Shown: in pieces, positions 5,897 to 48,673 of the stretch
Position numbering within the stretch: position 1 is the stretch's first letter
Layout of the letters: every line of letters starts with the position of its first letter
Origin: Tetramitus jugosus
Lineage: Eukaryota > Protista > Heterolobosea
Length of the DNA stretch: 64,000 nt
Reading direction: 5' to 3'
Assembly: GCA_937625935.1 (NCBI GenBank)
Contig: OW569395.1
Coordinates: 186,001 to 250,000, forward strand
The notes under the pieces: model-generated
Seen by the model: only the letters and a program-made list of their open reading frames with translations
What the model was told of the DNA's origin: nothing
Databases searched by the model: none
Program-made: the position numbers and the translations under genes

Positions 5897-8800
5897 ATGT
5901 CGTCAGCAGAAATCCCAGAGCAGGTTGCTAAGCTCATGAAAGAGACTGGTACTAACATTACCAACCCAAAGGATTTGGAAGCTCTCTCAAAAGTTTCAGT
6001 CAGACAATTGGCCAAGTTGTTTGATGAATTGGCTAAAAACTCAAGGGCTAGTAACCTGAACAAGAAATCGACTGCCGACATTTTCAGATCGTGGACCAAG
6101 GCTGTTGTCGAGCAATTCCATGAAGGAGGTGAAGAGCAAAAGAAGAGAGTCAAAACCAGTGCTGAAATGTACTTGGATCGACAAAACCAAATCTTGACCG
6201 ACAATGAGATGAAGGAAAGAAGAGAGGAGTTGGTGGAGATTGAAGGCAATATTGCCAAGGCCAATGCAGAGTTGGATAAATTAAAGGTGACACTTAAAGA
6301 ATCTGCTGCTAAGAATGACAAATCTGCAGTTGAACAAATCAAAAGAGACATGGAGGACTTGAAAACCTCGAAGCGTGGTGACATAGAAAAGAGTGACAAG
6401 AGAAAGGATGTCGCCTTTTATAAAACAATCTTCTATCATAAGAAGAGAGATAATCTCGTTAGAAAGTCTGATGATGACGACAAGGAGAGAGATGAAGATG
6501 GAAAAACAGAGAAGGAGTTTGTTGAAGATAGTTTGTTTCAAGATAAGTGGAACAATGCAGGAGGGGTAGATGAAACAACAGTTATTATGGAGATGAACCC
6601 TAGTGATTGTGTGGAGGAGGCAGAGAACAAATTCTTGAGATCATTCGGAACTGATATTCAAGGAACAAGTTCAAAAAGTGTTTCATCTTCATCTTTCAAG
6701 TGCCATAAGAAGGGAAAGAAACATCCTGTGGTGATACGCACAGTGCTCGAGCGAGTGGATGAAGAGGGAGTAACAAGAGCTACCATTACAGCTCGTTGTG
6801 CGGGAGAATTTGCTTCAAATGAAATCAAAGAGAACATTGAGCAGTCGATGGATTCGTTGAAAGAGGCAGAGGCAGCTGAGGCTGAGAAACGATATCAGTC
6901 TTATGATGATCGTACAGAGACAACCTCAAATATTCCTCTAGCGGGAACAAAAAGATTAGTGGATGCATGGGAAAGAATGATGCAATCTGTGGCTACAGAT
7001 AAAGCAATCTATCCGGTATACACCAGGGGCGGTCGAGAAAAGGGTCGATCAGTGATGCTCGGATCTGACTACAAGAAACATCCTGTAGTATTAAGGTCAG
7101 ATCTCAAGAATGATGGAGGAGTCTATTCACTCGATCTCTCATGCAAAACACCAGTCGGAGAAGAGGAAGAGGGAAAAGTCTTGATGGAGGCAGTTGAATC
7201 GGTTCTGTTTGAGACAGGATTTGAGTTTGTGAGCAAATTGAACCAATCATCTCTAGAGGTGATTGTTCCAGGCATTCCCGATGTAGACGATGCAGTGAAA
7301 AGATTAATCGATGGGGCAGGATCACAACCCGTTGGTGGAGATCATTCGACAAAAACAGGAGAATTACACTTCATATCGAAGAAGAACAAACGACATCCAG
7401 TCTTTATGAAAGCTGTGTTAGATGAAGACGACGACAGAGTAAAAATTCATCTTACACTTTGTGGTGATGACAAGGGGGTTGTTGACGAGATTGCCAAGGG
7501 TATGAAGGAGTCTGTTGAGAGAGAAGAAGATCCTGCCGAAAGGTTTGCAGATGAATGGGATTTGGCAGAGGAAAACGAGTCTCATAGAATCATAGATCTT
7601 AATTGTGAACAAAACGTGGACGAGGCAACTGAGAACTTTATTCAGAACACAGGCATACAGGTAGTTGGAGTTGTTCAACAAGAAAAGAACGATCGATTGA
7701 TTAACTTCTATGGAAAGAATGGAACCAAGAAGCACCCTGTATTGATGAGAGCTACAATTAAGAGAGACGAAGAAGGAGTCGTTGTGGCTGATCTGAAAGC
7801 GAGAGGTCCTAGTAAGAAAGAGATACGCGCTGATCTTGATTCCTTGAAAGAGTCCCTTGCTTCAAATGATCCTCTCGCACGTTTTGAGAGCGAGTTTGAG
7901 AATCTAGGAGAATCATCAACAAGGAAAGAGGACATTCAAATCCCTAGAGTTTCAACTCTCATCGATATGTTCGAGAAAATGGGAAAGGCTGCAGATTCCA
8001 AACCTTTTGTGAACAGGTCAGATAGAAAGTTAGGACATATCGGATTTATTGGAAAGAAGAACCCTGAACATCCGGTGTATATGAAGGGTAAAGCTGTTAA
8101 AATGGAGGATGGAAGTTACGTGGCCCAAGTGGAAACACGTTGTAATGAAGAGCATGCTCGCTGCGAGTTTTTGAACCGACTCAAAGAGGATCTCTTTGAT
8201 AACGATTGGAACAAATATGGAGCTGCCACAGAAAAAGCAAAGTCTGTTGAGATGTTGGCTGATAATATCGAAGACTCCATCAAACAATTATCAGATGCCA
8301 CTCAATCCCTTCCTACTTCAACAAGGGCAATAGGCAACAAGACTACTGTTTCAATCTACGGAAAGAGACAAGGAAAACATCCGATAATGATGAAAGCAGA
8401 GATTGAACAGAAATCTCCTGGAGTTTTTCACACAATTGTTAAGGCAAGATCGGACGACAATCAATTTAGAGATGAGATGACAAGTGATGTCGTCACACAA
8501 TTAGATCCCATCACTACGTTTGACAAAGTATGGGATGAAAATAAGGGATCTGAGAGAGCTGATGTTGTAAATCTCCCAAATGTTAGATCGCTTATTGAGG
8601 CATTTGAAAGATTAGGGAAAGCGGCTGACGTACCCGTAGCTAAAAGGCCTGGAAAAGTGGGTCAGTGTGCCTTCTTTGCAAAGAAGAATCATAAACACCC
8701 AGTGCTTATCAAAGCAAATGTCAGAGAAAATAACGATGGAACTTTTTCAACAGAGCTGTCTTCCAAATCTGAAGATCAACAACTACTTAAAGTATCTATT

Positions 8801-11800
8801 GACGAACTTCAAGACTCATTGTTCCAGAATGAGTGGCAGAGATTGGGAGAGGATTTAGAATCATTCAATCAAATTGAAATTTCTGGAGATAGTTTGGATG
8901 CGGCCATCAGAAAGGTTTCCAATGCTGCCGGTACCCTACCAGTCGGCAGTATTAAGACTGAAGGAGATAAACATATTGTGTCTTTTTATGGAAAGAACAA
9001 TGAAAAGAAACCAGTTTTGTTGAGGGCAGAGATCTCTTCTAATGGATCTGGAAGTTTTTTGGCTGTTGTTCAAGCACGAGCTGAAGATGAAGATGCGAGA
9101 GACGAGGTGTCTCTAGGCTTGAAGGAACTTCTAGAGAGAGGCGAGGATCCAGCGTCTGTGTTCCAAGATTCTTGGGATCAACTACATGCTCATCATCAAG
9201 AGTTGACTCCTTATGACTTGTATTCAAACGATCTCAACGCCGCAACGGACAAGCTAATTGACGATTTAAGCATCATACCCGCTGCTCCAGTGAACAGAGA
9301 CGGAGAAAAAAATTCAGTGGACTTCCATGGCAGAGATAGTGACAAACCTGTGTTGCTGAGAGCCCTCATTGATAAAGATGGAGATGGAAATGTTCAAGTT
9401 CAAGTGTCTGGTCGGTCTGAGAGTGCCGATGCTCTTTCTTTGTCTTTGAAGGACGTTCAAGAGATTTTAGAGAGCAAAGATCCCAACAACGTGTTCGAGA
9501 GACAGTGGGAGAGTCTAGGAGAGGATAAACAACATAGCAATCATATTCATTTCCCGAATGTGAAATCTCTGGTTGATGCTATGGAATCATTGATACATGC
9601 AGCAAACACAGATCCAATTAGGAGAAGGGAAGACAAAAAGAATGGCAAGTGTGCTTTCCTGAAAAAGACTCAGAAGCACCCTATCCTGATAAAGGCAAAA
9701 GTGAGCGAGAGAGAGCCATGTGAATTTGTTTGCACTCTTGAGGCAAGATCTGAACTCCCTCAAGAAGATATTCTTAAAGAGATAGATTCTCTGGGAGGAG
9801 AACTATTTAACAACGCTTGGGCAGAACTCGGAGAGGGCACGACACATAACAAGGTTGTTCCATTTGAAGGATTGGATATTGATAACATCTTAGAGATTTT
9901 GTCCAAGGAAACAACATTAACTCCAATTGGGGACCTAAGAAAGGGACACAAATCACTTAACTTGATTGGAAAGATGAACAAAAAACATCCGCTTCTACTG
10001 AAGGCTGACTTTACAAAGGATACGGACGGAAAGGTCATCTGTTGTTTAAGTTCTGTCTGCGACGACGAGTCAGAAAGATTAGAAGCAGTGGGAAGCATTG
10101 ACGATCTTCTTGAAAAGATCTCTAACCCACTCTTCCGAGCTGCTCTTGCAAAATCAAATCAATTCTCCAACCTCGGGATACCACACAAATCATCAGAACC
10201 AGAAATGATGACAAAGAAGGACGACGATATCGCTATTACTGTGATCAAGCATGCATTCAAGGATAATGCTGTGATAGAAATCGCTTGTAAACCGATAGAT
10301 CCTCTAGAAACAAAACTCGACTACACTAAGGTTTCGTTTGGTAATGAAGGAACAATTAGACCAGTGAAGCAGAGTACTACGAAGAATGGCACTGGATTCA
10401 ACACATTCGCAGAGATGGGAGGAGTTCCGGGAGATATTGAGGGAACGTTAGTCACACTAGCGACAACCAATCTGAACAGTGGAGAAAGTAAGAAGTCTAT
10501 AATACCTCTTGATATCATCACCATCACACCAGGTGACTTTGTTCGAGATTCGATTGTCAATTTTGACAAACGATGGGAGGAATTGGGGGAGAATTTTGAT
10601 AACGAGTATATTACTCAATTTGATTTCTCAACTAAGGATGATGTCAAGTCAGCTGTGCCCAAGACGATTGAATACTGTCCTCTGATGGCTATCAACAAAG
10701 ACGATAAGATTGATGGTGACAAGCACATTCTCAAATTTTCGGGTGCAGCTCCAAAGAGAGACGGTATTGATCCAAATGTCTTGATGCAATGCACCGTTTA
10801 CAAAGATCCAGAAGGAAATATTTCTTTGATGGCTGTTTGCCGTTCCGAGGATGAAGTTGCAAGAGTTGATATTCCTGAAGAATTAATCCAAAAATTACGA
10901 GTCAATAAGAGCAAACTAGAGAGTGATTTATTTAGAGATATCTTATCTCAACATCCAAAGATTGCCGAGCTAGGAGTTCCTCACAAAAGTTCTCCTGCAA
11001 TCCATTTACTCAGCAATATAGATTATAGAATAGCTGTTACGAAGCACTCGTATGCTGAACATGTCGTTCTTCAGTTTGATTATCAGAATCAAGCTTCTGT
11101 AAGCGAACTCAACAACATTTTGACAAAGTGCAAGGAGGGAAATCCATTTATTAATGATAGGGATGGTTTAATTTTCGAGAGAGCGATTAAGACCGGAGTA
11201 ACACCGACGGGATCAACCTCATACGGATTTATCAGGTTGAAGAAAGTGGAATCAAGTCATTTCGCAAGTGGGACTTTCTTAACGCACACAAAGTTTGAAA
11301 GCCAAAAGATGGACTCTGAAGTGACCCGTGCCGGAGAAATTGCAACAGTTGAGTTGGATTTGTCCCCTTTTAAGATGTATACAATGGATTATTTGGCAAA
11401 CAAACATGTTGATGATGTTGCTGAATTATTCAAGTCCCTCGAAAATGAGAGTTGCAAGAGGGCGATCAAACTCGAAAGACTCAGCTTTGAGGAAGTTAGA
11501 GATCGCGTTTTGAGAGCTGCTTGCTTGAATTTGGCTGATTATGAAGCCAAGGGTATTGGAGGATGCTTGAAGTTCTCAGGAGAATTAGTAGATGGTGAGC
11601 ATGTTCTATTAGAGGCCGTTGTAAGTCCATTGGATGAAGAGAGCTGCTTGATCGAGTTGACTGGAAGATCAACGGTTCCTCTTTTGAGAGAGAGCTTCCT
11701 GAGAGACGTGGAGGAGTTGATCAAGTGTCCCTTGGTTGTTGTTATTGAAGAAAAAGACAACAACGGACAAGAAGAATCAAGAAAAGGAAGGAAACCGTTG

Positions 11801-13642
11801 TTGGATTATAAGGTAGATCTAACATCTATCCCTGAACCCAAGTGGTTGAAACCAAGGTTTAATGTCTTGAAGTATGATCCGAAAAAGAAGTGGTCATCCA
11901 AAGCAAAAAGAGTCTGGGAGTTGGATTTCTTTGGAGGTCAATTCAAGAACATGGATACAAAGGGTGTAATCAAGAAGTGTCCCGAGCCAGCAAAATTGTA
12001 TCACTTGGAGAGAACACCATCTGATGCCACTCGTGTGAGAATGAACTTCTTCGAAAGTTCTCACAAGTATGAGTTGGTCTTTGACAATAATTTCCAGAGA
12101 GAACGTTTCTATGAATGTGCCCACGCTTTGAGGCCAACTTTCTATGTTTGGTGTCCAAATATATGTGCTCCAGGAGAAACTCGATGCAGAGCTGAAATAT
12201 CAGGGTCTTTCAACTTTGATTCTTTAGGTGTTCAACAAAAAGTTACCGGTACTTGTCACATCAATGTGACCTCAAAGCCTTACGAAACAATTTCAGTGTG
12301 GTGCGGAACTTGGAATATGGGAGGTACTACCCCACCAAAGGATCCCCGATTGATGAGAAAGTATATTCCTGCTAATAAGCATGATATTTACGCCATTGCT
12401 GTTCAAGATTCCGGTTACTCCAAGGATAGAAATGCCTTTATTGGATATCTGCAAGGAATTCTGGGAAAGTCAGAATATGTTGTGTTGACTTTCTTGACCT
12501 TGTGGGATATTCAACTCTGTATTGCTGTTCGAAAGCGTCACTTCACAAAGATTACAAATGTTCAAAGCGAGCAACGACCAACACAAATCACGAGTGCCGG
12601 TACCAAGGGTGGCGTGGGAGTGTCACTGACCTTCAACGAAACAAGTTTCTGTTTTATCTCTTCCCACTTGGTTCCTAACAGCTCTGACGACACACCGAAC
12701 AGATTCACGGATAACTCAAAGACCAGAAACCTCATGATTGAAGATATTCTAGGAAATTTGAAGCTGGGCAACAAATCTCTGGATATCAATGGACAATTTC
12801 ATCATGTCTTCCTGTTAGGAGACTTGAACTATCGCATTGAAATGCCTGCTGAAGAAGCTCTCCCATTGATATCCTCTGGTCAATATGATCAGTTGATCGA
12901 AAAGGATGAGTTGAGACAAGAAATGTCTTCTGGAAAGGTTCTTTGCGGTTTTAAGGAAGCTGATATCAAGTTCCAGCCTACATTTAAATTTGAGAAGGCA
13001 ACAATCACTTATGAAACCAAGAAACCAATTACTCCATCCTACTGCGATAGAATTTTATGGAAGAGTATGGCGAACAACACAGTGACCTGTGTGGACTATA
13101 AGGCTTGCACTGACTTGCTTGTGAGTGACCATCTTCCAGTGTCTGCTGTTTTCAAGATCAATACCATTCGTCCTTATGCTAGCACATTTGCCAAGGAACA
13201 AGAAACCTGCCAAATCATATTCGATAGTATTAAGGTTAAGCATAGAGAAGCCACCAAGGAGAACCAAATCAACAAACCAACACTGTCTTTTTATGCACCA
13301 TTCATTGACGACAATATCGTTGTGACCACCAAACAACCGAAGACTTACAACCCAGAGTTCTTGGCTTCTATGATTCCAATAATTGAACCATCGACAGGTC
13401 AGAAGGATTTCCTTAAATTGCAACATCTTGTTATTGCTCTAACCGATGGTCTTTCCAAAGACAACACTGACAATCTCCAAGGTACAGCTCTCTTGCCACT
13501 CAAGAATGGTTTGGATTCAACCAACAACGTCACAGTCACATTGGATCTTGTTAGGTTTGGAAAGAAGGTTGGAGATGTTGAGGTCACCTACAAGTATGTT
13601 TTCCGTCAAAAACAACAATCCAATGACGGTTCACTTTTCTAA
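5897..13642 (+). CDS. Giant (2581 aa) SHIP-like inositol polyphosphate 5-phosphatase with N-terminal coiled coil, tandem gamma-COP appendage domains, PH-like and C2-like domains
   Basis: 5-phosphatase motifs GTWNMG, KGGVGVS, SSHL, LLGDLNYRI, PSYCDRILW and SDHLPV (about 12290-13165). Upstream repeats resemble the gamma-COP C-terminus (NFDKRWEELGE...VCRSED; FSNLGIPHKSS...VIKHAF). Confidence 0.85.
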   Translation: MSSAEIPEQVAKLMKETGTNITNPKDLEALSKVSVRQLAKLFDELAKNSRASNLNKKSTADIFRSWTKAVVEQFHEGGEEQKKRVKTSAEMYLDRQNQILTDNEMKERREELVEIEGNIAKANAELDKLKVTLKESAAKNDKSAVEQIKRDMEDLKTSKRGDIEKSDKRKDVAFYKTIFYHKKRDNLVRKSDDDDKERDEDGKTEKEFVEDSLFQDKWNNAGGVDETTVIMEMNPSDCVEEAENKFLRSFGTDIQGTSSKSVSSSSFKCHKKGKKHPVVIRTVLERVDEEGVTRATITARCAGEFASNEIKENIEQSMDSLKEAEAAEAEKRYQSYDDRTETTSNIPLAGTKRLVDAWERMMQSVATDKAIYPVYTRGGREKGRSVMLGSDYKKHPVVLRSDLKNDGGVYSLDLSCKTPVGEEEEGKVLMEAVESVLFETGFEFVSKLNQSSLEVIVPGIPDVDDAVKRLIDGAGSQPVGGDHSTKTGELHFISKKNKRHPVFMKAVLDEDDDRVKIHLTLCGDDKGVVDEIAKGMKESVEREEDPAERFADEWDLAEENESHRIIDLNCEQNVDEATENFIQNTGIQVVGVVQQEKNDRLINFYGKNGTKKHPVLMRATIKRDEEGVVVADLKARGPSKKEIRADLDSLKESLASNDPLARFESEFENLGESSTRKEDIQIPRVSTLIDMFEKMGKAADSKPFVNRSDRKLGHIGFIGKKNPEHPVYMKGKAVKMEDGSYVAQVETRCNEEHARCEFLNRLKEDLFDNDWNKYGAATEKAKSVEMLADNIEDSIKQLSDATQSLPTSTRAIGNKTTVSIYGKRQGKHPIMMKAEIEQKSPGVFHTIVKARSDDNQFRDEMTSDVVTQLDPITTFDKVWDENKGSERADVVNLPNVRSLIEAFERLGKAADVPVAKRPGKVGQCAFFAKKNHKHPVLIKANVRENNDGTFSTELSSKSEDQQLLKVSIDELQDSLFQNEWQRLGEDLESFNQIEISGDSLDAAIRKVSNAAGTLPVGSIKTEGDKHIVSFYGKNNEKKPVLLRAEISSNGSGSFLAVVQARAEDEDARDEVSLGLKELLERGEDPASVFQDSWDQLHAHHQELTPYDLYSNDLNAATDKLIDDLSIIPAAPVNRDGEKNSVDFHGRDSDKPVLLRALIDKDGDGNVQVQVSGRSESADALSLSLKDVQEILESKDPNNVFERQWESLGEDKQHSNHIHFPNVKSLVDAMESLIHAANTDPIRRREDKKNGKCAFLKKTQKHPILIKAKVSEREPCEFVCTLEARSELPQEDILKEIDSLGGELFNNAWAELGEGTTHNKVVPFEGLDIDNILEILSKETTLTPIGDLRKGHKSLNLIGKMNKKHPLLLKADFTKDTDGKVICCLSSVCDDESERLEAVGSIDDLLEKISNPLFRAALAKSNQFSNLGIPHKSSEPEMMTKKDDDIAITVIKHAFKDNAVIEIACKPIDPLETKLDYTKVSFGNEGTIRPVKQSTTKNGTGFNTFAEMGGVPGDIEGTLVTLATTNLNSGESKKSIIPLDIITITPGDFVRDSIVNFDKRWEELGENFDNEYITQFDFSTKDDVKSAVPKTIEYCPLMAINKDDKIDGDKHILKFSGAAPKRDGIDPNVLMQCTVYKDPEGNISLMAVCRSEDEVARVDIPEELIQKLRVNKSKLESDLFRDILSQHPKIAELGVPHKSSPAIHLLSNIDYRIAVTKHSYAEHVVLQFDYQNQASVSELNNILTKCKEGNPFINDRDGLIFERAIKTGVTPTGSTSYGFIRLKKVESSHFASGTFLTHTKFESQKMDSEVTRAGEIATVELDLSPFKMYTMDYLANKHVDDVAELFKSLENESCKRAIKLERLSFEEVRDRVLRAACLNLADYEAKGIGGCLKFSGELVDGEHVLLEAVVSPLDEESCLIELTGRSTVPLLRESFLRDVEELIKCPLVVVIEEKDNNGQEESRKGRKPLLDYKVDLTSIPEPKWLKPRFNVLKYDPKKKWSSKAKRVWELDFFGGQFKNMDTKGVIKKCPEPAKLYHLERTPSDATRVRMNFFESSHKYELVFDNNFQRERFYECAHALRPTFYVWCPNICAPGETRCRAEISGSFNFDSLGVQQKVTGTCHINVTSKPYETISVWCGTWNMGGTTPPKDPRLMRKYIPANKHDIYAIAVQDSGYSKDRNAFIGYLQGILGKSEYVVLTFLTLWDIQLCIAVRKRHFTKITNVQSEQRPTQITSAGTKGGVGVSLTFNETSFCFISSHLVPNSSDDTPNRFTDNSKTRNLMIEDILGNLKLGNKSLDINGQFHHVFLLGDLNYRIEMPAEEALPLISSGQYDQLIEKDELRQEMSSGKVLCGFKEADIKFQPTFKFEKATITYETKKPITPSYCDRILWKSMANNTVTCVDYKACTDLLVSDHLPVSAVFKINTIRPYASTFAKEQETCQIIFDSIKVKHREATKENQINKPTLSFYAPFIDDNIVVTTKQPKTYNPEFLASMIPIIEPSTGQKDFLKLQHLVIALTDGLSKDNTDNLQGTALLPLKNGLDSTNNVTVTLDLVRFGKKVGDVEVTYKYVFRQKQQSNDGSLF
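6530..11725 (+). repeat. Protein-level tandem array: 11 consecutive ~105-110-aa platform repeats followed by two Ig-like + platform appendages
   Basis: Recurrent F-x3-W/F start, K-[KH]-P-[VIL]-x2-[KR]-A core and AR[SC][ED] end, counted 11 times from 6530 to 10120. Two more platforms follow the LG[IV]PHKSS Ig-like units. Confidence 0.8.
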
Positions 13643-13726
13643 TGGATCTCATGACAATAAACCCGCTTTTCCCGCCGAAAGTTGTTGCCGTTTTCAACTA
13701 CCATTACAAGTGTTTAAAAACAAAGA

Positions 13727-15204
13727 ATGAATCCGACTACTACTTCTAAATGGGAAGTGTATGATAATAATCTTCATGGTGTTCCTGATACTGTAGAGGA
13801 TGAAGGTGGCTATCATCAGCAAATGGACCTTAGCGCACTAGAGGACAGAATTCGAACGGTAACTTTTCAGAAGAGGATCAGAATCAATGAGTTTTTCAAA
13901 GATTTTGATCCTTTGAGATCTGGTTACGTATCTCAACCACAATTTAGAAGATGTCTCAACATGTGTGGAGTGAATTTAACCAACGTAGAAGCTCAGTTGC
14001 TATTGGATACGTACCTCGACAAAGAACGACAAAAGGTTCATTATGTCAGATTTACTGACAATATTGATCAAGGTAACCATGAATACGTTCTTCAATTTTT
14101 CTAGAGTTGAATGAAACTAATCTTGTTCCATAATCTTCAGTGTTCACGGTGAAAAATTTGGAGAAGAAACCTCTCGAGAGTTTGTTTACCATTCAACCTG
14201 TACTACAAGCCACACGTACACCAAAGGAACCGCAAACATATTCCGTCACTGAGTTGAGAGAGTTATTAGAGAGGTTGAAGAGAGAAGCAAGTATCATGGG
14301 ATATGTGGTGAAACACTTCTTTTATGATTTTGACCTTCACAACCATGGTGTAGTGACAAGATGTCAGTTCATCCAATGTATCCCCTTCCGAAATTTGAAT
14401 GAAAAGGAAATGAGAATTATTTTGGAGAGATACACGACATCTTCAGGCGATGTAAATTACATGCTTTTCCACAATGAAATTGAAGGAGATGATGAATCTA
14501 ATATTGTCATTAAATCGTCTCGTGGGGGACAAACAACTGGTTCCGATGCTTGTCATTTGGAAGCAGAGAGCGTTGAAGATTTGATCCGAAAACAGTTGTT
14601 GAAGTACAATCTTAAGCTGGAAGAAGTGTTCCGAGATTTTGATCCTTTACGATCTGGTTTCATTACCAAGCCTCAATTTATATCTTCGTTGGGTACTATC
14701 AAGTTCCACAAGTTGATTTTCTCAGAGAAGGAGTTAAATTCAGTCGCAGAAAAGTACCGAGTGGAAGATGACAATTCCAGGTCGAGGGTAGCATACATGG
14801 AGTTTCTCACAAATATGAACAAGGTATTTAACTATTCCAATCTTGAAAAGTATCCTCAGAGAAGGTTTGAACAACCCAATCACTTGTTGAAAACTTGCAA
14901 GCAATCTTTGAACCAACAATCGATGAGTGACTTGGAAGAGATATTGGCCCGAATTAAGCATGCAACACTGACAAAGAGGATCCTACTAAAGCCCTTCTTC
15001 CAAGATTTTGACAAGACATTGAAGGGAACCTTTTCAACCAAGCATGTGACAAAAACAAGGTTCGAGAGAGTGCTAGCTATGATTGGTATGACTCTGACCG
15101 TAGATCAGTACAACCTCTTGACGAGAAGATACGATGATTTAAACGATGGAACGGTTAATTATGTTATGTTCTTGGAAGACGTTGATGAAGTATCAATGGA
15201 CTGA
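13727..15204 (+). CDS. Multi-EF-hand protein, two exons (13727-14072, 14141-15204; 469 aa); resembles ciliary EFCAB6/FAP115-type proteins
   Basis: Four FF[KRYQ]DFD units, for example FFKDFDPLRSGYV and VFRDFDPLRSGFI. Phase-1 intron 14073-14140 (GTAACC...ACTAA...TTCAG) restores the frame. Confidence 0.75.
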
Positions 15205-46104: not shown

Positions 46105-46178
46105 GCGGTTGTAGATCAGTTGGTTAGATCGTGAGCTTAACACGCTCAAGGTCGCCGGTTCGATCCCGGTCAATCGTA
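46105..46178 (+). tRNA. tRNA-Val (AAC)
   Basis: Cloverleaf: acceptor GCGGTTG/CAATCGT, D stem GATC/GATC, anticodon stem TGAGC/GCTCA with loop TTAACAC, T arm GCCGG-TTCGATC-CCGGT. TTTT terminator at 46184-46187. Confidence 0.92.
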
Positions 46179-48568: not shown

Positions 48569-48641
48569 GCCGTCGTAGCTCAGCTGGAAGAGCACTGGAC
48601 TTCTAATCCAGTGGTCGCGGGTTCGAGTCCCGTCGTCGGTA
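48569..48641 (+). tRNA. tRNA-Arg (TCT)
   Basis: Acceptor GCCGTCG/CGTCGGT (one T-T), D stem GCTC/GAGC, anticodon arm CTGGA-CTTCTAA-TCCAG, T arm GCGGG-TTCGAGT-CCCGT. T7 terminator at 48643-48649. Confidence 0.93.
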
Positions 48642-48673
48642 CTTTTTTTCCTTCGAAAGTTATGTGGTTTTAT

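What the first reader, a model, noticed from the sequence alone, without database searches (positions are those of the whole stretch)
5897..13642. Inositol 5-phosphatase fused to ~13 gamma-COP appendage platform domains
Seen: 11 tandem ~108-aa repeats, then two complete appendage-like units (Ig-like FxxLG[IV]PHKSS...KH[AS][FY]...[VA]V[IL][EQ] plus platform NFDKRWEELGE...RSED). These are followed by PH-like, SHIP-like phosphatase and C2-like domains. Known: the gamma-COP appendage normally occurs once, at the end of the coat subunit, and binds accessory factors such as ArfGAP2/3 (Glo3). 5-phosphatases such as synaptojanin and OCRL normally bind coat appendages rather than contain them. Inference: a multivalent scaffold tying phosphoinositide turnover to COPI-type traffic. 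I do not recognise this architecture.
Basis: partly seen in the sequence, partly recalled or inferred. Interest (0 to 1): 0.82.

Follow-up and report, generated by a model that had tools for sequence, protein, structure and literature searches.

The report
Lipid phosphatase carrying thirteen coat "ear" domains
A soil amoeba has one expressed 2,581-residue gene that strings 13 copies of the partner-binding "platform" lobe of the COPI coat's gamma subunit in front of a SHIP-like inositol 5-phosphatase; I found no description of this layout, relatives occur only in Naegleria-type amoebae, and its function is untested.

Summary
Window 5897-13642 (+) is one uninterrupted ORF. It has an N-terminal module and coiled coil, then 11 tandem platform-only domains with a period of about 109 aa. 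Two complete gamma-COP-type appendages (sandwich plus platform) follow, then PH_29, a 5-phosphatase and a SHIP-type C2.

Pfam, my own profile HMMs and two AlphaFold models confirm the folds (TM 0.66-0.79 to gamma-COP and adaptin ears). Soil metatranscriptome contigs from three studies tile 7900-13612, bridge the appendage/PH junction without indels or splices, and differ mostly at third codon positions.

This is a heterolobosean family. An environmental ortholog has the same layout. Naegleria orthologs carry one clear platform. A paralog in this genome has four appendages and no phosphatase.

Among 1.84 billion representative proteins, only three carry more than one platform or appendage unit.

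This copy keeps the core catalytic residues. Four conserved metal or head-group contacts that its orthologs keep are changed (E to D, N to T, Y to F, R to I), so activity or specificity may have shifted.

The link to COPI rests on homology only. I read it as a new variant of known kinds, of moderate to high interest, and I found no paper describing it.

The parts
5897..6121 (+). N-terminal family module (aa 1-75)
   Evidence: It is conserved (24-62% identity) in the paralog on contig C2, in P0047 and P0048, and in the platform-less PH_29 phosphatases P0008, P0161 (Percolomonas) and P0004. It also aligns to N. fowleri P0006. There is no Pfam, PDB or Atlas match. Only two genes in this genome carry it.
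6122..6466 (+). Charged helical (coiled-coil-like) stretch ending in the conserved motif R[DN]xx[FY]YxT[IVL][FL] (aa about 169-183)
   Evidence: Alignments show the motif in all appendage-bearing members. The coiled-coil call is from sequence appearance only.
6518..10096 (+). Array of 11 tandem platform-only domains R1-R11. Cores in nt: 6536-6799, 6884-7150, 7208-7456, 7544-7804, 7883-8146, 8195-8455, 8519-8773, 8822-9085, 9161-9421, 9494-9754, 9806-10063.
   Evidence: The profile HMM scores each unit at 52-90 bits. Pfam PF16381 gives 9 stretches. The AF2 model of R10 has pLDDT 92. It matches gamma-COP 1pzd and 1r4x and beta2-adaptin ears at TM 0.66-0.68, and Atlas gamma-COP clusters at TM 0.76-0.78. 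The motif is FxxxW in R1, R4 and R6-R11, FxxxF in R3 and R5, and lost in R2.
10133..10861 (+). Appendage A1: beta-sandwich (aa 1413-1545) plus platform (aa 1546-1655, FxxxW kept)
   Evidence: Pfam PF08752 hits partially (E 3e-7) and PF16381 at E 7e-13. The AF2 model has pLDDT 86 and pTM 0.78. Foldseek gives 1pzd at E 9.5e-17 and 1r4x at TM 0.76 over 273 columns; AP2 alpha ears reach only 0.44-0.49.
10931..11671 (+). Appendage A2: beta-sandwich (aa 1679-1810) plus divergent platform (aa 1844-1925, FxxxW lost)
   Evidence: Pfam PF08752 at E 1.8e-13; PF16381 at E 4.4e-4, below its cut-off. My own HMMs score the sandwich at 137 bits and the platform at 50 bits. It was not folded.
11810..12205 (+). 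PH_29 PH-like domain (aa 1972-2103)
   Evidence: Pfam PF25404, E 2e-34 to 7e-36. It is the only PH_29 in this genome.
12305..13147 (+). Inositol polyphosphate 5-phosphatase domain (aa 2137-2417). Variant contact residues: D2171 (nt 12407-12409), T2236 (12602-12604), F2363 (12983-12985), I2378 (13028-13030).
   Evidence: Pfam PF22669, E 9e-54. It aligns to SHIP2, SHIP1, INPP5E, OCRL and INPP5B structures. D2171 and T2236 are unchanged in an RNA-library contig and in a contig of organism A's own run X8.
13211..13582 (+). SHIP-type C2 domain (aa about 2439-2562)
   Evidence: It aligns continuously with the C2 of SHIP2 Ptase-C2 5oko. Pfam C2_SHIP1-2_2nd is only E 0.031 here, but E 5.7e-5 to 8e-4 in orthologs.

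Best explanation
What it is: a single, expressed, selectively maintained gene of a heterolobosean amoeba. It belongs to a lineage-restricted family defined by a conserved N-terminal module plus a helical stretch.

How the family is built: a SHIP-like PH_29-5-phosphatase-C2 cassette acquired gamma-COP-derived ear domains. The ancestral state was probably one platform-only unit plus two full appendages. In this lineage the platform-only unit was amplified to 11.

Proposed mechanism (inferred, not shown): the platform lobes act as they do in gamma-COP and the AP2 ears, as exposed docking sites centred on the FxxxW helix for short motifs in disordered tails of accessory proteins such as ArfGAP2/3 (Glo3). 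Thirteen sites on one chain would give high-avidity capture or clustering of such partners. The two sandwich-bearing appendages could dock on coat components, and the PH/C2/phosphatase end would engage phosphoinositide membranes.

The enzyme end: the catalytic core is intact, but four conserved metal or head-group contacts have changed in this species. This end may therefore have altered specificity or reduced activity.
For: Shown:
- One ORF.
- 13 platform and 2 sandwich domains by Pfam and profile HMMs.
- Folds confirmed: R10 has pLDDT 92 and TM 0.66-0.68 to 1pzd, 1r4x and 1e42, and 0.76-0.79 to Atlas gamma-COP clusters. A1 has TM 0.71-0.76 to the whole gamma-COP appendage, E about 1e-16.
- Expression and continuity: RNA-library contigs from three soil studies at 97-99% identity tile 7900-13612. 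X2 (11411-12361) and X3 (11444-12249) bridge the A2/PH junction. There are no indels or joints. Depth is zero in 13700-13899, which the organism's own run covers.
- Selection: 32 of the 40 variants listed fall on third codon positions, by my count; 9 of 11 inside the array.
- Conservation: P0001 has the same order. Unit-by-unit orthology is supported for R9 (100/99), R11 (98/93) and the A1 platform (99/95). Naegleria orthologs have the N-module, one platform, PH_29, phosphatase and C2.
- The FxxxW ligand-site motif (gamma-COP F772/W776; W776S abolishes ARFGAP2 binding; PMC2171037, PMC2262067) is kept in 9 of 13 units and is FxxxF in 2 more.
- In the assembled coat the platform is exposed for partners while the sandwich base binds beta'-COP (PMC5482573).
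- Active-site table: with roles from PMC5550278.
Against: - No partner was identified, and no binding or localisation data exist.
- The Trp of FxxxW is not conserved between orthologous units: R10 is W here and F in P0001; R11 is W here and I in P0001.
- The most conserved columns look like core positions (KHP, G, RS) rather than surface.
- Mutating yeast Sec21's FxxxF had no detectable effect (PMC2262067).
- Percolomonas-type relatives (P0161, P0004, P0008) show no platform domains, so the ears are not essential to the cassette.
- The complex prediction of A2 with this genome's beta'-COP propeller gave no verdict.
Confidence: 0.5

Rival explanations
1. The platform array is mainly a structural element. 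It would be a semi-rigid beads-on-a-string spacer or self-assembly scaffold that sets the distance between the N-terminal module and the membrane-binding phosphatase end, and the FxxxW helix would be a folding feature rather than a ligand site.
For: - Each unit folds confidently on its own, and linkers are short.
- Orthologous units swap the Trp for Phe or Ile.
- The conserved columns are mostly buried-type positions.
- The number of units differs widely between relatives: 1 clear platform in Naegleria against 13 here.
- Yeast Sec21 FxxxF mutants have no detectable phenotype (PMC2262067).
Against: - FxxxW or FxxxF persists in 11 of 13 units despite 13-38% overall identity.
- The homologous lobes in gamma-COP, alpha-adaptin and beta2-adaptin are partner-binding hubs (PMC2262067, PMC5482573). 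Several of the AP2 ear structures listed are peptide-bound complexes.
Confidence: 0.22
2. The protein is chiefly a sponge or decoy that competes with gamma-COP's own ear for accessory factors. Its phosphatase is drifting towards a non-catalytic lipid-binding module (a pseudoenzyme).
For: - Four conserved contacts are changed only in this copy, while P0001, Willaertia and Naegleria keep E/N/Y/R: E473 to D, N540 to T, Y661 to F, R682 to I (roles from PMC5550278).
- Other family members have lost core catalytic residues: P0009 has Cys at D607, P0004 has Gln at H718, and P0011 has Gly at N609 and D717.
- A paralog with the same N-module has four appendages and no phosphatase at all.
Against: - The core residues are all kept: N432, the SHL His, D607, N609, the CDR motif, D717 and H718.
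- Asp can still offer a carboxylate to the metal.
- Variants in the phosphatase region are nearly all at third codon positions.
- It is the only PH_29-type phosphatase in the genome.
Confidence: 0.2
3. The architecture is an assembly chimera or a read-through of two adjacent genes.
For: I found no positive evidence. The 5' 2 kb of the ORF was not checked against reads.
Against: - An independent metagenome contig (P0001/L016) has the same order.
- Naegleria orthologs are also fused.
- Two RNA-library contigs cross the junction; there are no stops, no indels and no splice joints.
Confidence: 0.02

Closest known systems
Gamma-COP appendage (PDB 1R4X, 1PZD; Pfam PF08752 + PF16381)
   Same: - A1, and by HMM also A2, is a bilobed sandwich plus platform, with TM 0.71-0.76 for A1.
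- The platform-only units share the fold and the FxxxW helix.
   Different: - There is no Adaptin_N trunk. The canonical gamma-COP is a separate gene on contig C5.
- There are 13 platforms in one chain, 11 of them without a sandwich.
- The units sit in the middle of a protein, not at its C-terminus.
AP-4 beta4 ear (PDB 2MJ7), a platform-only appendage
   Same: It is a precedent for a platform lobe folding on its own. It appears among the fold matches at TM 0.50.
   Different: It is a single copy at the end of an adaptin subunit. It is not tandem and is not fused to an enzyme.
SHIP1/SHIP2 (INPP5D/INPPL1) phosphatase-C2 unit
   Same: These are the best solved relatives. The alignment runs through both the phosphatase and the C2 (E 1.5e-49). 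Like SHIP2, this protein has Gly at the position of INPP5B N275 (PMC5550278).
   Different: - No SH2, SAM or first-C2 domain; PH_29 stands upstream instead.
- The L4 loop is shorter, and the R682 equivalent is Ile here.
- Four contact residues are changed.
Synaptojanin and OCRL
   Same: They are 5-phosphatases wired to vesicle coats.
   Different: They carry short motifs that bind ears; one example is the alpha-ear structure 1w80 with synaptojanin peptides, listed. Here the enzyme carries the ears itself, so the logic is inverted.
Naegleria fowleri FDP41_004133 and N. lovaniensis C9374_000565 ('hypothetical proteins', about 2,020 aa)
   Same: They are orthologs with the same N-module, one platform, PH_29, 5-phosphatase and C2. 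Identity over the C-terminal 620 aa is 39%.
   Different: They have only one clear platform and two weak sandwich remnants. Charged low-complexity spacers stand where the array is here. They keep E/N/Y/R at the four contacts.
Paralog in this genome (G000 C2, L013:5221-9285) and its relatives P0047 and P0048
   Same: Same N-module, helical stretch and motif, followed by multiple gamma-COP appendages.
   Different: Four full appendages (S-P units, one S-P-P) and no PH, phosphatase or C2.

Membership tests
Gamma-COP C-terminal platform domain (PF16381) | Sequence match above Pfam's gathering score | tested here: met
   255 bits against a cut-off of 31.2, with 9 stretches. All 13 units score 50-90 bits with a family-wide HMM.
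Gamma-COP C-terminal platform domain (PF16381) | Platform alpha/beta fold | tested here: met
   The R10 model has pLDDT 92. It matches 1pzd and 1r4x at TM 0.66-0.68 and rmsd 2.8-2.9, and Atlas gamma-COP clusters at TM 0.76-0.78.
Gamma-COP C-terminal platform domain (PF16381) | FxxxW ligand-site motif (F772/W776) | tested here: inconclusive
   FxxxW in 9 of 13 units, FxxxF in 2, lost in 2. The Trp is not always kept in orthologous units. Ligand binding was not tested.
Coatomer gamma subunit (COPG/Sec21) | Adaptin_N trunk followed by a single C-terminal appendage | tested here: not met
   There is no Adaptin_N in this protein. The true gamma-COP is a separate gene, L014:3722-5968.
Complete adaptin/COPI appendage (sandwich + platform) | Bilobed fold superposable on the gamma-COP ear | tested here: met
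   A1 gives Foldseek E 9.5e-17 and TM 0.71-0.76 over about 275 columns. A2 rests on Pfam and HMMs only.
Inositol polyphosphate 5-phosphatase (PF22669) | Domain match | tested here: met
   183 bits, E 9e-54. It aligns to ten or more solved 5-phosphatases.
Inositol polyphosphate 5-phosphatase (PF22669) | Full set of catalytic, metal and head-group residues | tested here: inconclusive
   The core is kept: N432, His of SHL, D607, N609, CDR, D717 and H718. Changed are E473 to D, N540 to T, Y661 to F and R682 to I. Activity is not testable with these tools.
SHIP subfamily | Phosphatase tightly followed by the SHIP-type C2 | tested here: met
   One continuous alignment to SHIP2 Ptase-C2 5oko, query 171-603.
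SHIP subfamily | N-terminal SH2 domain, first C2, C-terminal SAM or proline-rich tail | tested here: not met
   None were found. A fish SHIP2 shows them with the same scan.
PH_29 (PF25404) | Sequence match above the gathering score | tested here: met
   118.7-123.5 bits against a cut-off of 27.

The most novel reading that the evidence does not exclude
Heterolobosean amoebae, whose Golgi is unstacked, evolved a free-standing family of 'ear-array' proteins. These act as high-valency hubs that gather ArfGAP-type and other motif-bearing COPI accessory factors on phosphoinositide-marked membranes. This would be a new layer of coat regulation in which the enzyme carries the ears instead of the motifs. 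In this species the array grew to 13 sites while the phosphatase began to change into a lipid-reading or altered-specificity module.
Probability: 0.25. Interest if true: 0.75.

Novelty: new variant of a known kind. Interest (0 to 1): 0.6.

Why it matters
Appendage ("ear") domains are the interaction hubs of vesicle coats. As far as I know, and in everything I could search, they occur once, at the end of a large coat subunit.

Here the partner-binding lobe has left the coat, multiplied to 13 copies and been joined to a lipid phosphatase. Sister proteins made only of ears exist alongside it.

If the units still bind motifs, this is a natural experiment in multivalency for coat regulation. It would also be a handle for finding what gamma-COP ears recognise, which remains poorly defined.

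The four active-site-adjacent changes, set against intact orthologs, give a compact test case for how 5-phosphatase specificity or pseudoenzyme status evolves.

Tried and rejected
- **Word search with aa 1400-2581 as a stand-alone query.** It returned nothing, because the words come from the first 500, poorly conserved residues. I repeated it with a region setting.
- **Remote jobs with alignment A1.** I removed those rows and did not send them to any remote tool again. They were used only in local scripts.
- **Complex prediction of appendage A2 with the second propeller of this genome's beta'-COP, L020.** No verdict; this is not evidence either way.
- **N-terminal module.** No Pfam hit, no Atlas hit, no PDB relative by profile.
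- **Metagenome scan with a PH-phosphatase-C2 profile.** It gave 55 loci. The listed matches are of low identity over most of the domain, typically 24-35%, with higher values only over short segments, and none is a close relative. No platform or sandwich was found in six frames.
- **P0092 (2,938 aa, 6 'stretches') from the big search.** It is a bacterial Calx-beta/Ig protein, a false positive.
The tree does not support it. Units group as R6+R8 and R2/R5/R7/R10, which fits a two-unit a/b pattern better.
- **Literature searches.** No description of the architecture was found.
Full report
**Setting**

The window is eukaryotic.
- It carries a tRNA-Val with anticodon AAC.
- Its large ORFs encode VPS9, EF-hand, Sec7/GBF1-like, TCP-1 and MFS proteins.
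- Earlier notes of this scan call the organism a soil amoeba related to Acrasis and Naegleria. My homolog hits agree: Naegleria, Willaertia and Percolomonas.
- The genome, G000, is 26.35 Mb in 56 contigs. The window is C52:186001-250000.

**Observation**

Positions 5897..13642 on the + strand form one ORF of 2,581 codons without a stop.

Pfam finds the following:
- Coatomer_g_Cpla (PF16381), E 7.9e-77, nine stretches.
- COP-gamma_platf (PF08752, the sandwich lobe), twice.
- PH_29 at aa 1972-2103.
- Exo_endo_phos2 (the 5-phosphatase family) at aa 2137-2417.
- A weak match to the second C2 of SHIP.

I built a profile from the best platform unit and iterated it on the protein itself, then on the family. 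It finds 13 platform domains at 50-90 bits each. Eleven are tandem between aa 214 and 1389 with a mean period of 109 aa. The other two are at aa 1556-1651 and 1844-1925. A sandwich profile finds two sandwiches, directly in front of those last two platforms.

The units are only 13-38% identical to one another. This is an old protein array, not a recent DNA repeat.

**Fold tests**

- *Unit R10 (aa 1191-1304).* It was modelled with an alignment of the units and has mean pLDDT 92. In the PDB the matches with the highest TM-scores are the gamma-COP appendage and the beta2-adaptin ear: 1pzd at TM 0.68 and rmsd 2.8, 1r4x at 0.66, 1e42 and 2iv9 at 0.67-0.68. One unrelated chain has a lower E-value but TM of only 0.46. 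In the ESM Atlas the top named clusters are gamma-COP, at TM 0.76-0.78 and rmsd 2.1-2.5.
- *Appendage A1 (aa 1405-1660).* The model has pLDDT 86 and pTM 0.78. It superposes on the whole gamma-COP appendage across both lobes: E 9.5e-17 and TM 0.71-0.76 over about 275 columns. AP2 alpha ears reach only 0.44-0.49.

**One gene, expressed, under selection**

Contigs from three soil metatranscriptome studies, at 97-99% identity, tile 7900-13612.
- Two contigs (11411-12361 and 11444-12249) run straight across the boundary between appendage A2 (which ends at nt 11671) and PH_29 (which starts at nt 11810).
- No insertions, deletions or splice joints appear in the RNA-library contigs.
- All three RNA runs have zero depth in 13700-13899, just after the stop codon. 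The run of the organism itself covers that stretch.
- Of the 40 listed differences, 32 fall on third codon positions of this frame, by my count. Inside the array the figure is 9 of 11. Both halves are therefore under purifying selection.

These are contigs, not reads, so they show presence and continuity but not transcript ends.

The second refutation criterion, two separate genes, is not met either.

**Family**

- *P0001.* This is an N-terminally truncated protein on a 5.4-kb JGI metagenome contig, 62% identical over the C-terminal 620 aa. It has the same order: three array units, A1, A2, PH_29, phosphatase, C2.
- *Tree of platform units.* The 11 tandem units, together with P0001's three, form one clade (support 88/80). 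The unit-by-unit pairs are orthologous: R9 100/99, R11 98/93, R10 98/66, A1 platform 99/95. The array was therefore already individuated before these two species split. The appendage platforms cluster with canonical gamma-COP and paralog platforms.
- *Naegleria.* N. fowleri and N. lovaniensis 'hypothetical proteins' of about 2,020 aa share the N-terminal 190 aa, one clear platform (aa 316-404), PH_29, the phosphatase and the C2. Local HMMs also see two weak sandwich remnants.
- *Platform-less relatives.* The Percolomonas-type relatives P0161, P0004 and P0008 have the N-module and the PH_29-phosphatase cassette but no detectable platform.
- *Paralog in this genome.* A second gene, on contig C2 (L013:5221-9285, 1,354 aa), has the same N-module, helical stretch and short aromatic motif. 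Four full appendages follow, with no phosphatase. P0047 (1,402 aa, layout S-P-S-P-P-S-P-S-P) and P0048 (952 aa) are its relatives elsewhere.
- *Within this genome.* Only these two genes carry the N-module. Only this gene carries PH_29.

**Rarity**

I ran a profile of the platform units against 1.84 billion representative proteins. It gave 115 hits at E <= 0.001.
- Apart from short fragments, only three real proteins carry more than one platform or appendage unit: P0001, P0047 and P0048.
- A fourth multi-stretch hit, P0092, is a bacterial Ig-repeat false positive.
- The others have one stretch each. The seven proteins I scanned were those four plus canonical gamma-COPs or fragments of them.
- None of 55 metagenomic 5-phosphatase loci has a platform or sandwich nearby.
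- Full-text searches found no paper on tandem platform domains or on this fusion.

**The ligand site**

The start of each platform aligns with the gamma-COP helix that carries F772 and W776.
- The W776S mutation abolishes ARFGAP2 binding to the gamma ear (PMC2171037).
- FxxxW is the shared ligand motif of gamma-COP, beta-COP and the AP2 platforms (PMC2262067).
- Here FxxxW is kept in 9 of 13 units and is FxxxF in two more.
- In the assembled COPI coat the platform lobe is exposed for partners, and the base of the sandwich binds the second propeller of beta'-COP (PMC5482573).

This is the basis for the proposed mechanism: 13 motif-docking sites on one chain, plus two sandwich-bearing ears that might dock on coat components. 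It is inference, and three points weaken it:
- The Trp is not always kept in the orthologous unit of P0001.
- The best-conserved columns look structural.
- The one complex prediction I ran, A2 with this genome's beta'-COP propeller, gave no verdict.

**The enzyme end**

The C-terminal 620 aa align best to SHIP2 and SHIP1, in one stretch through both the phosphatase and the C2. There is no SH2, first C2 or SAM domain.

I used SHIP2 numbering, with roles taken from PMC5550278: D607 is the catalytic base, N540 and K541 contact P1, Y661 and N684 contact P4, R682 contacts P3, and H718 contacts P5.
- *Kept:* N432, K541, the SHL histidine, D607, N609, the CDR motif, D717 and H718.
- *Changed:* Asp for the QE glutamate (E473), Thr for N540, Phe for Y661 and Ile for R682.
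- P0001, Willaertia, Naegleria and OCRL-type enzymes keep E, N, Y and R at those four positions.
- D2171 and T2236 are not assembly errors. An RNA-library contig whose six differences are all accounted for elsewhere keeps both, and so does a contig of the organism's own run.
- Several other family members have lost core catalytic residues, so erosion of activity recurs in this family.

I cannot decide between altered specificity, lower activity and a non-catalytic role. The domain is still under purifying selection.

**Verdict**

The link to COPI and the 'turnover' function are unproven.

I file this as a new variant built from known parts. It is not a gamma-COP subunit (no trunk) and not a SHIP (no SH2 or SAM). 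It is a member of an undescribed heterolobosean family of ear-domain proteins, here expanded to the largest array I could find.

Noticed in passing
G000 contig C2:95220-99284 (L013:5221-9285): A paralog of 1,354 aa has the same N-terminal module and helical stretch, followed by four complete gamma-COP-type appendages and no phosphatase. Its relatives P0047 (S-P-S-P-P-S-P-S-P) and P0048 exist in other samples.
   Followed up: partly
window 6401-6445 (aa 169-183): A short conserved aromatic motif, R[DN]xx[FY]YxT[IVL][FL]xKK, sits at the end of the helical stretch in every appendage-bearing family member, including Naegleria. It could be a self-ligand for the platforms or a targeting motif.
   Followed up: no
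In a eukaryote this may be coincidence.
   Followed up: no
proteins P0009, P0011, P0004, P0161 (relatives from other samples): Several PH_29-type 5-phosphatases of related protists have lost core catalytic residues: Cys at D607, Gly at N609 and D717, Gln at H718, and QQ in place of QE. Pseudo-phosphatases seem to recur in this family.
   Followed up: partly
ESM Atlas cluster, row 3: A cluster of about 793-aa archaeal (Thermoplasmatota) hypothetical proteins contains a domain that matches the platform model at TM 0.79 and rmsd 2.0. This may be convergence on a common alpha/beta fold, or something more.
   Followed up: no
window 46105-46178 and 48569-48642: Two tRNA genes: tRNA-Val(AAC) and tRNA-Arg(TCT). 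The A34 valine tRNA is a eukaryotic trait and helped to place the window.
   Followed up: no
L016:2-355: On the P0001 contig, a separately called 117-aa gene just upstream of P0001 is itself a platform unit (PF16381, E 1.2e-9). The ortholog's array therefore continues upstream and was split by the gene caller or by a sequence error.
   Followed up: partly
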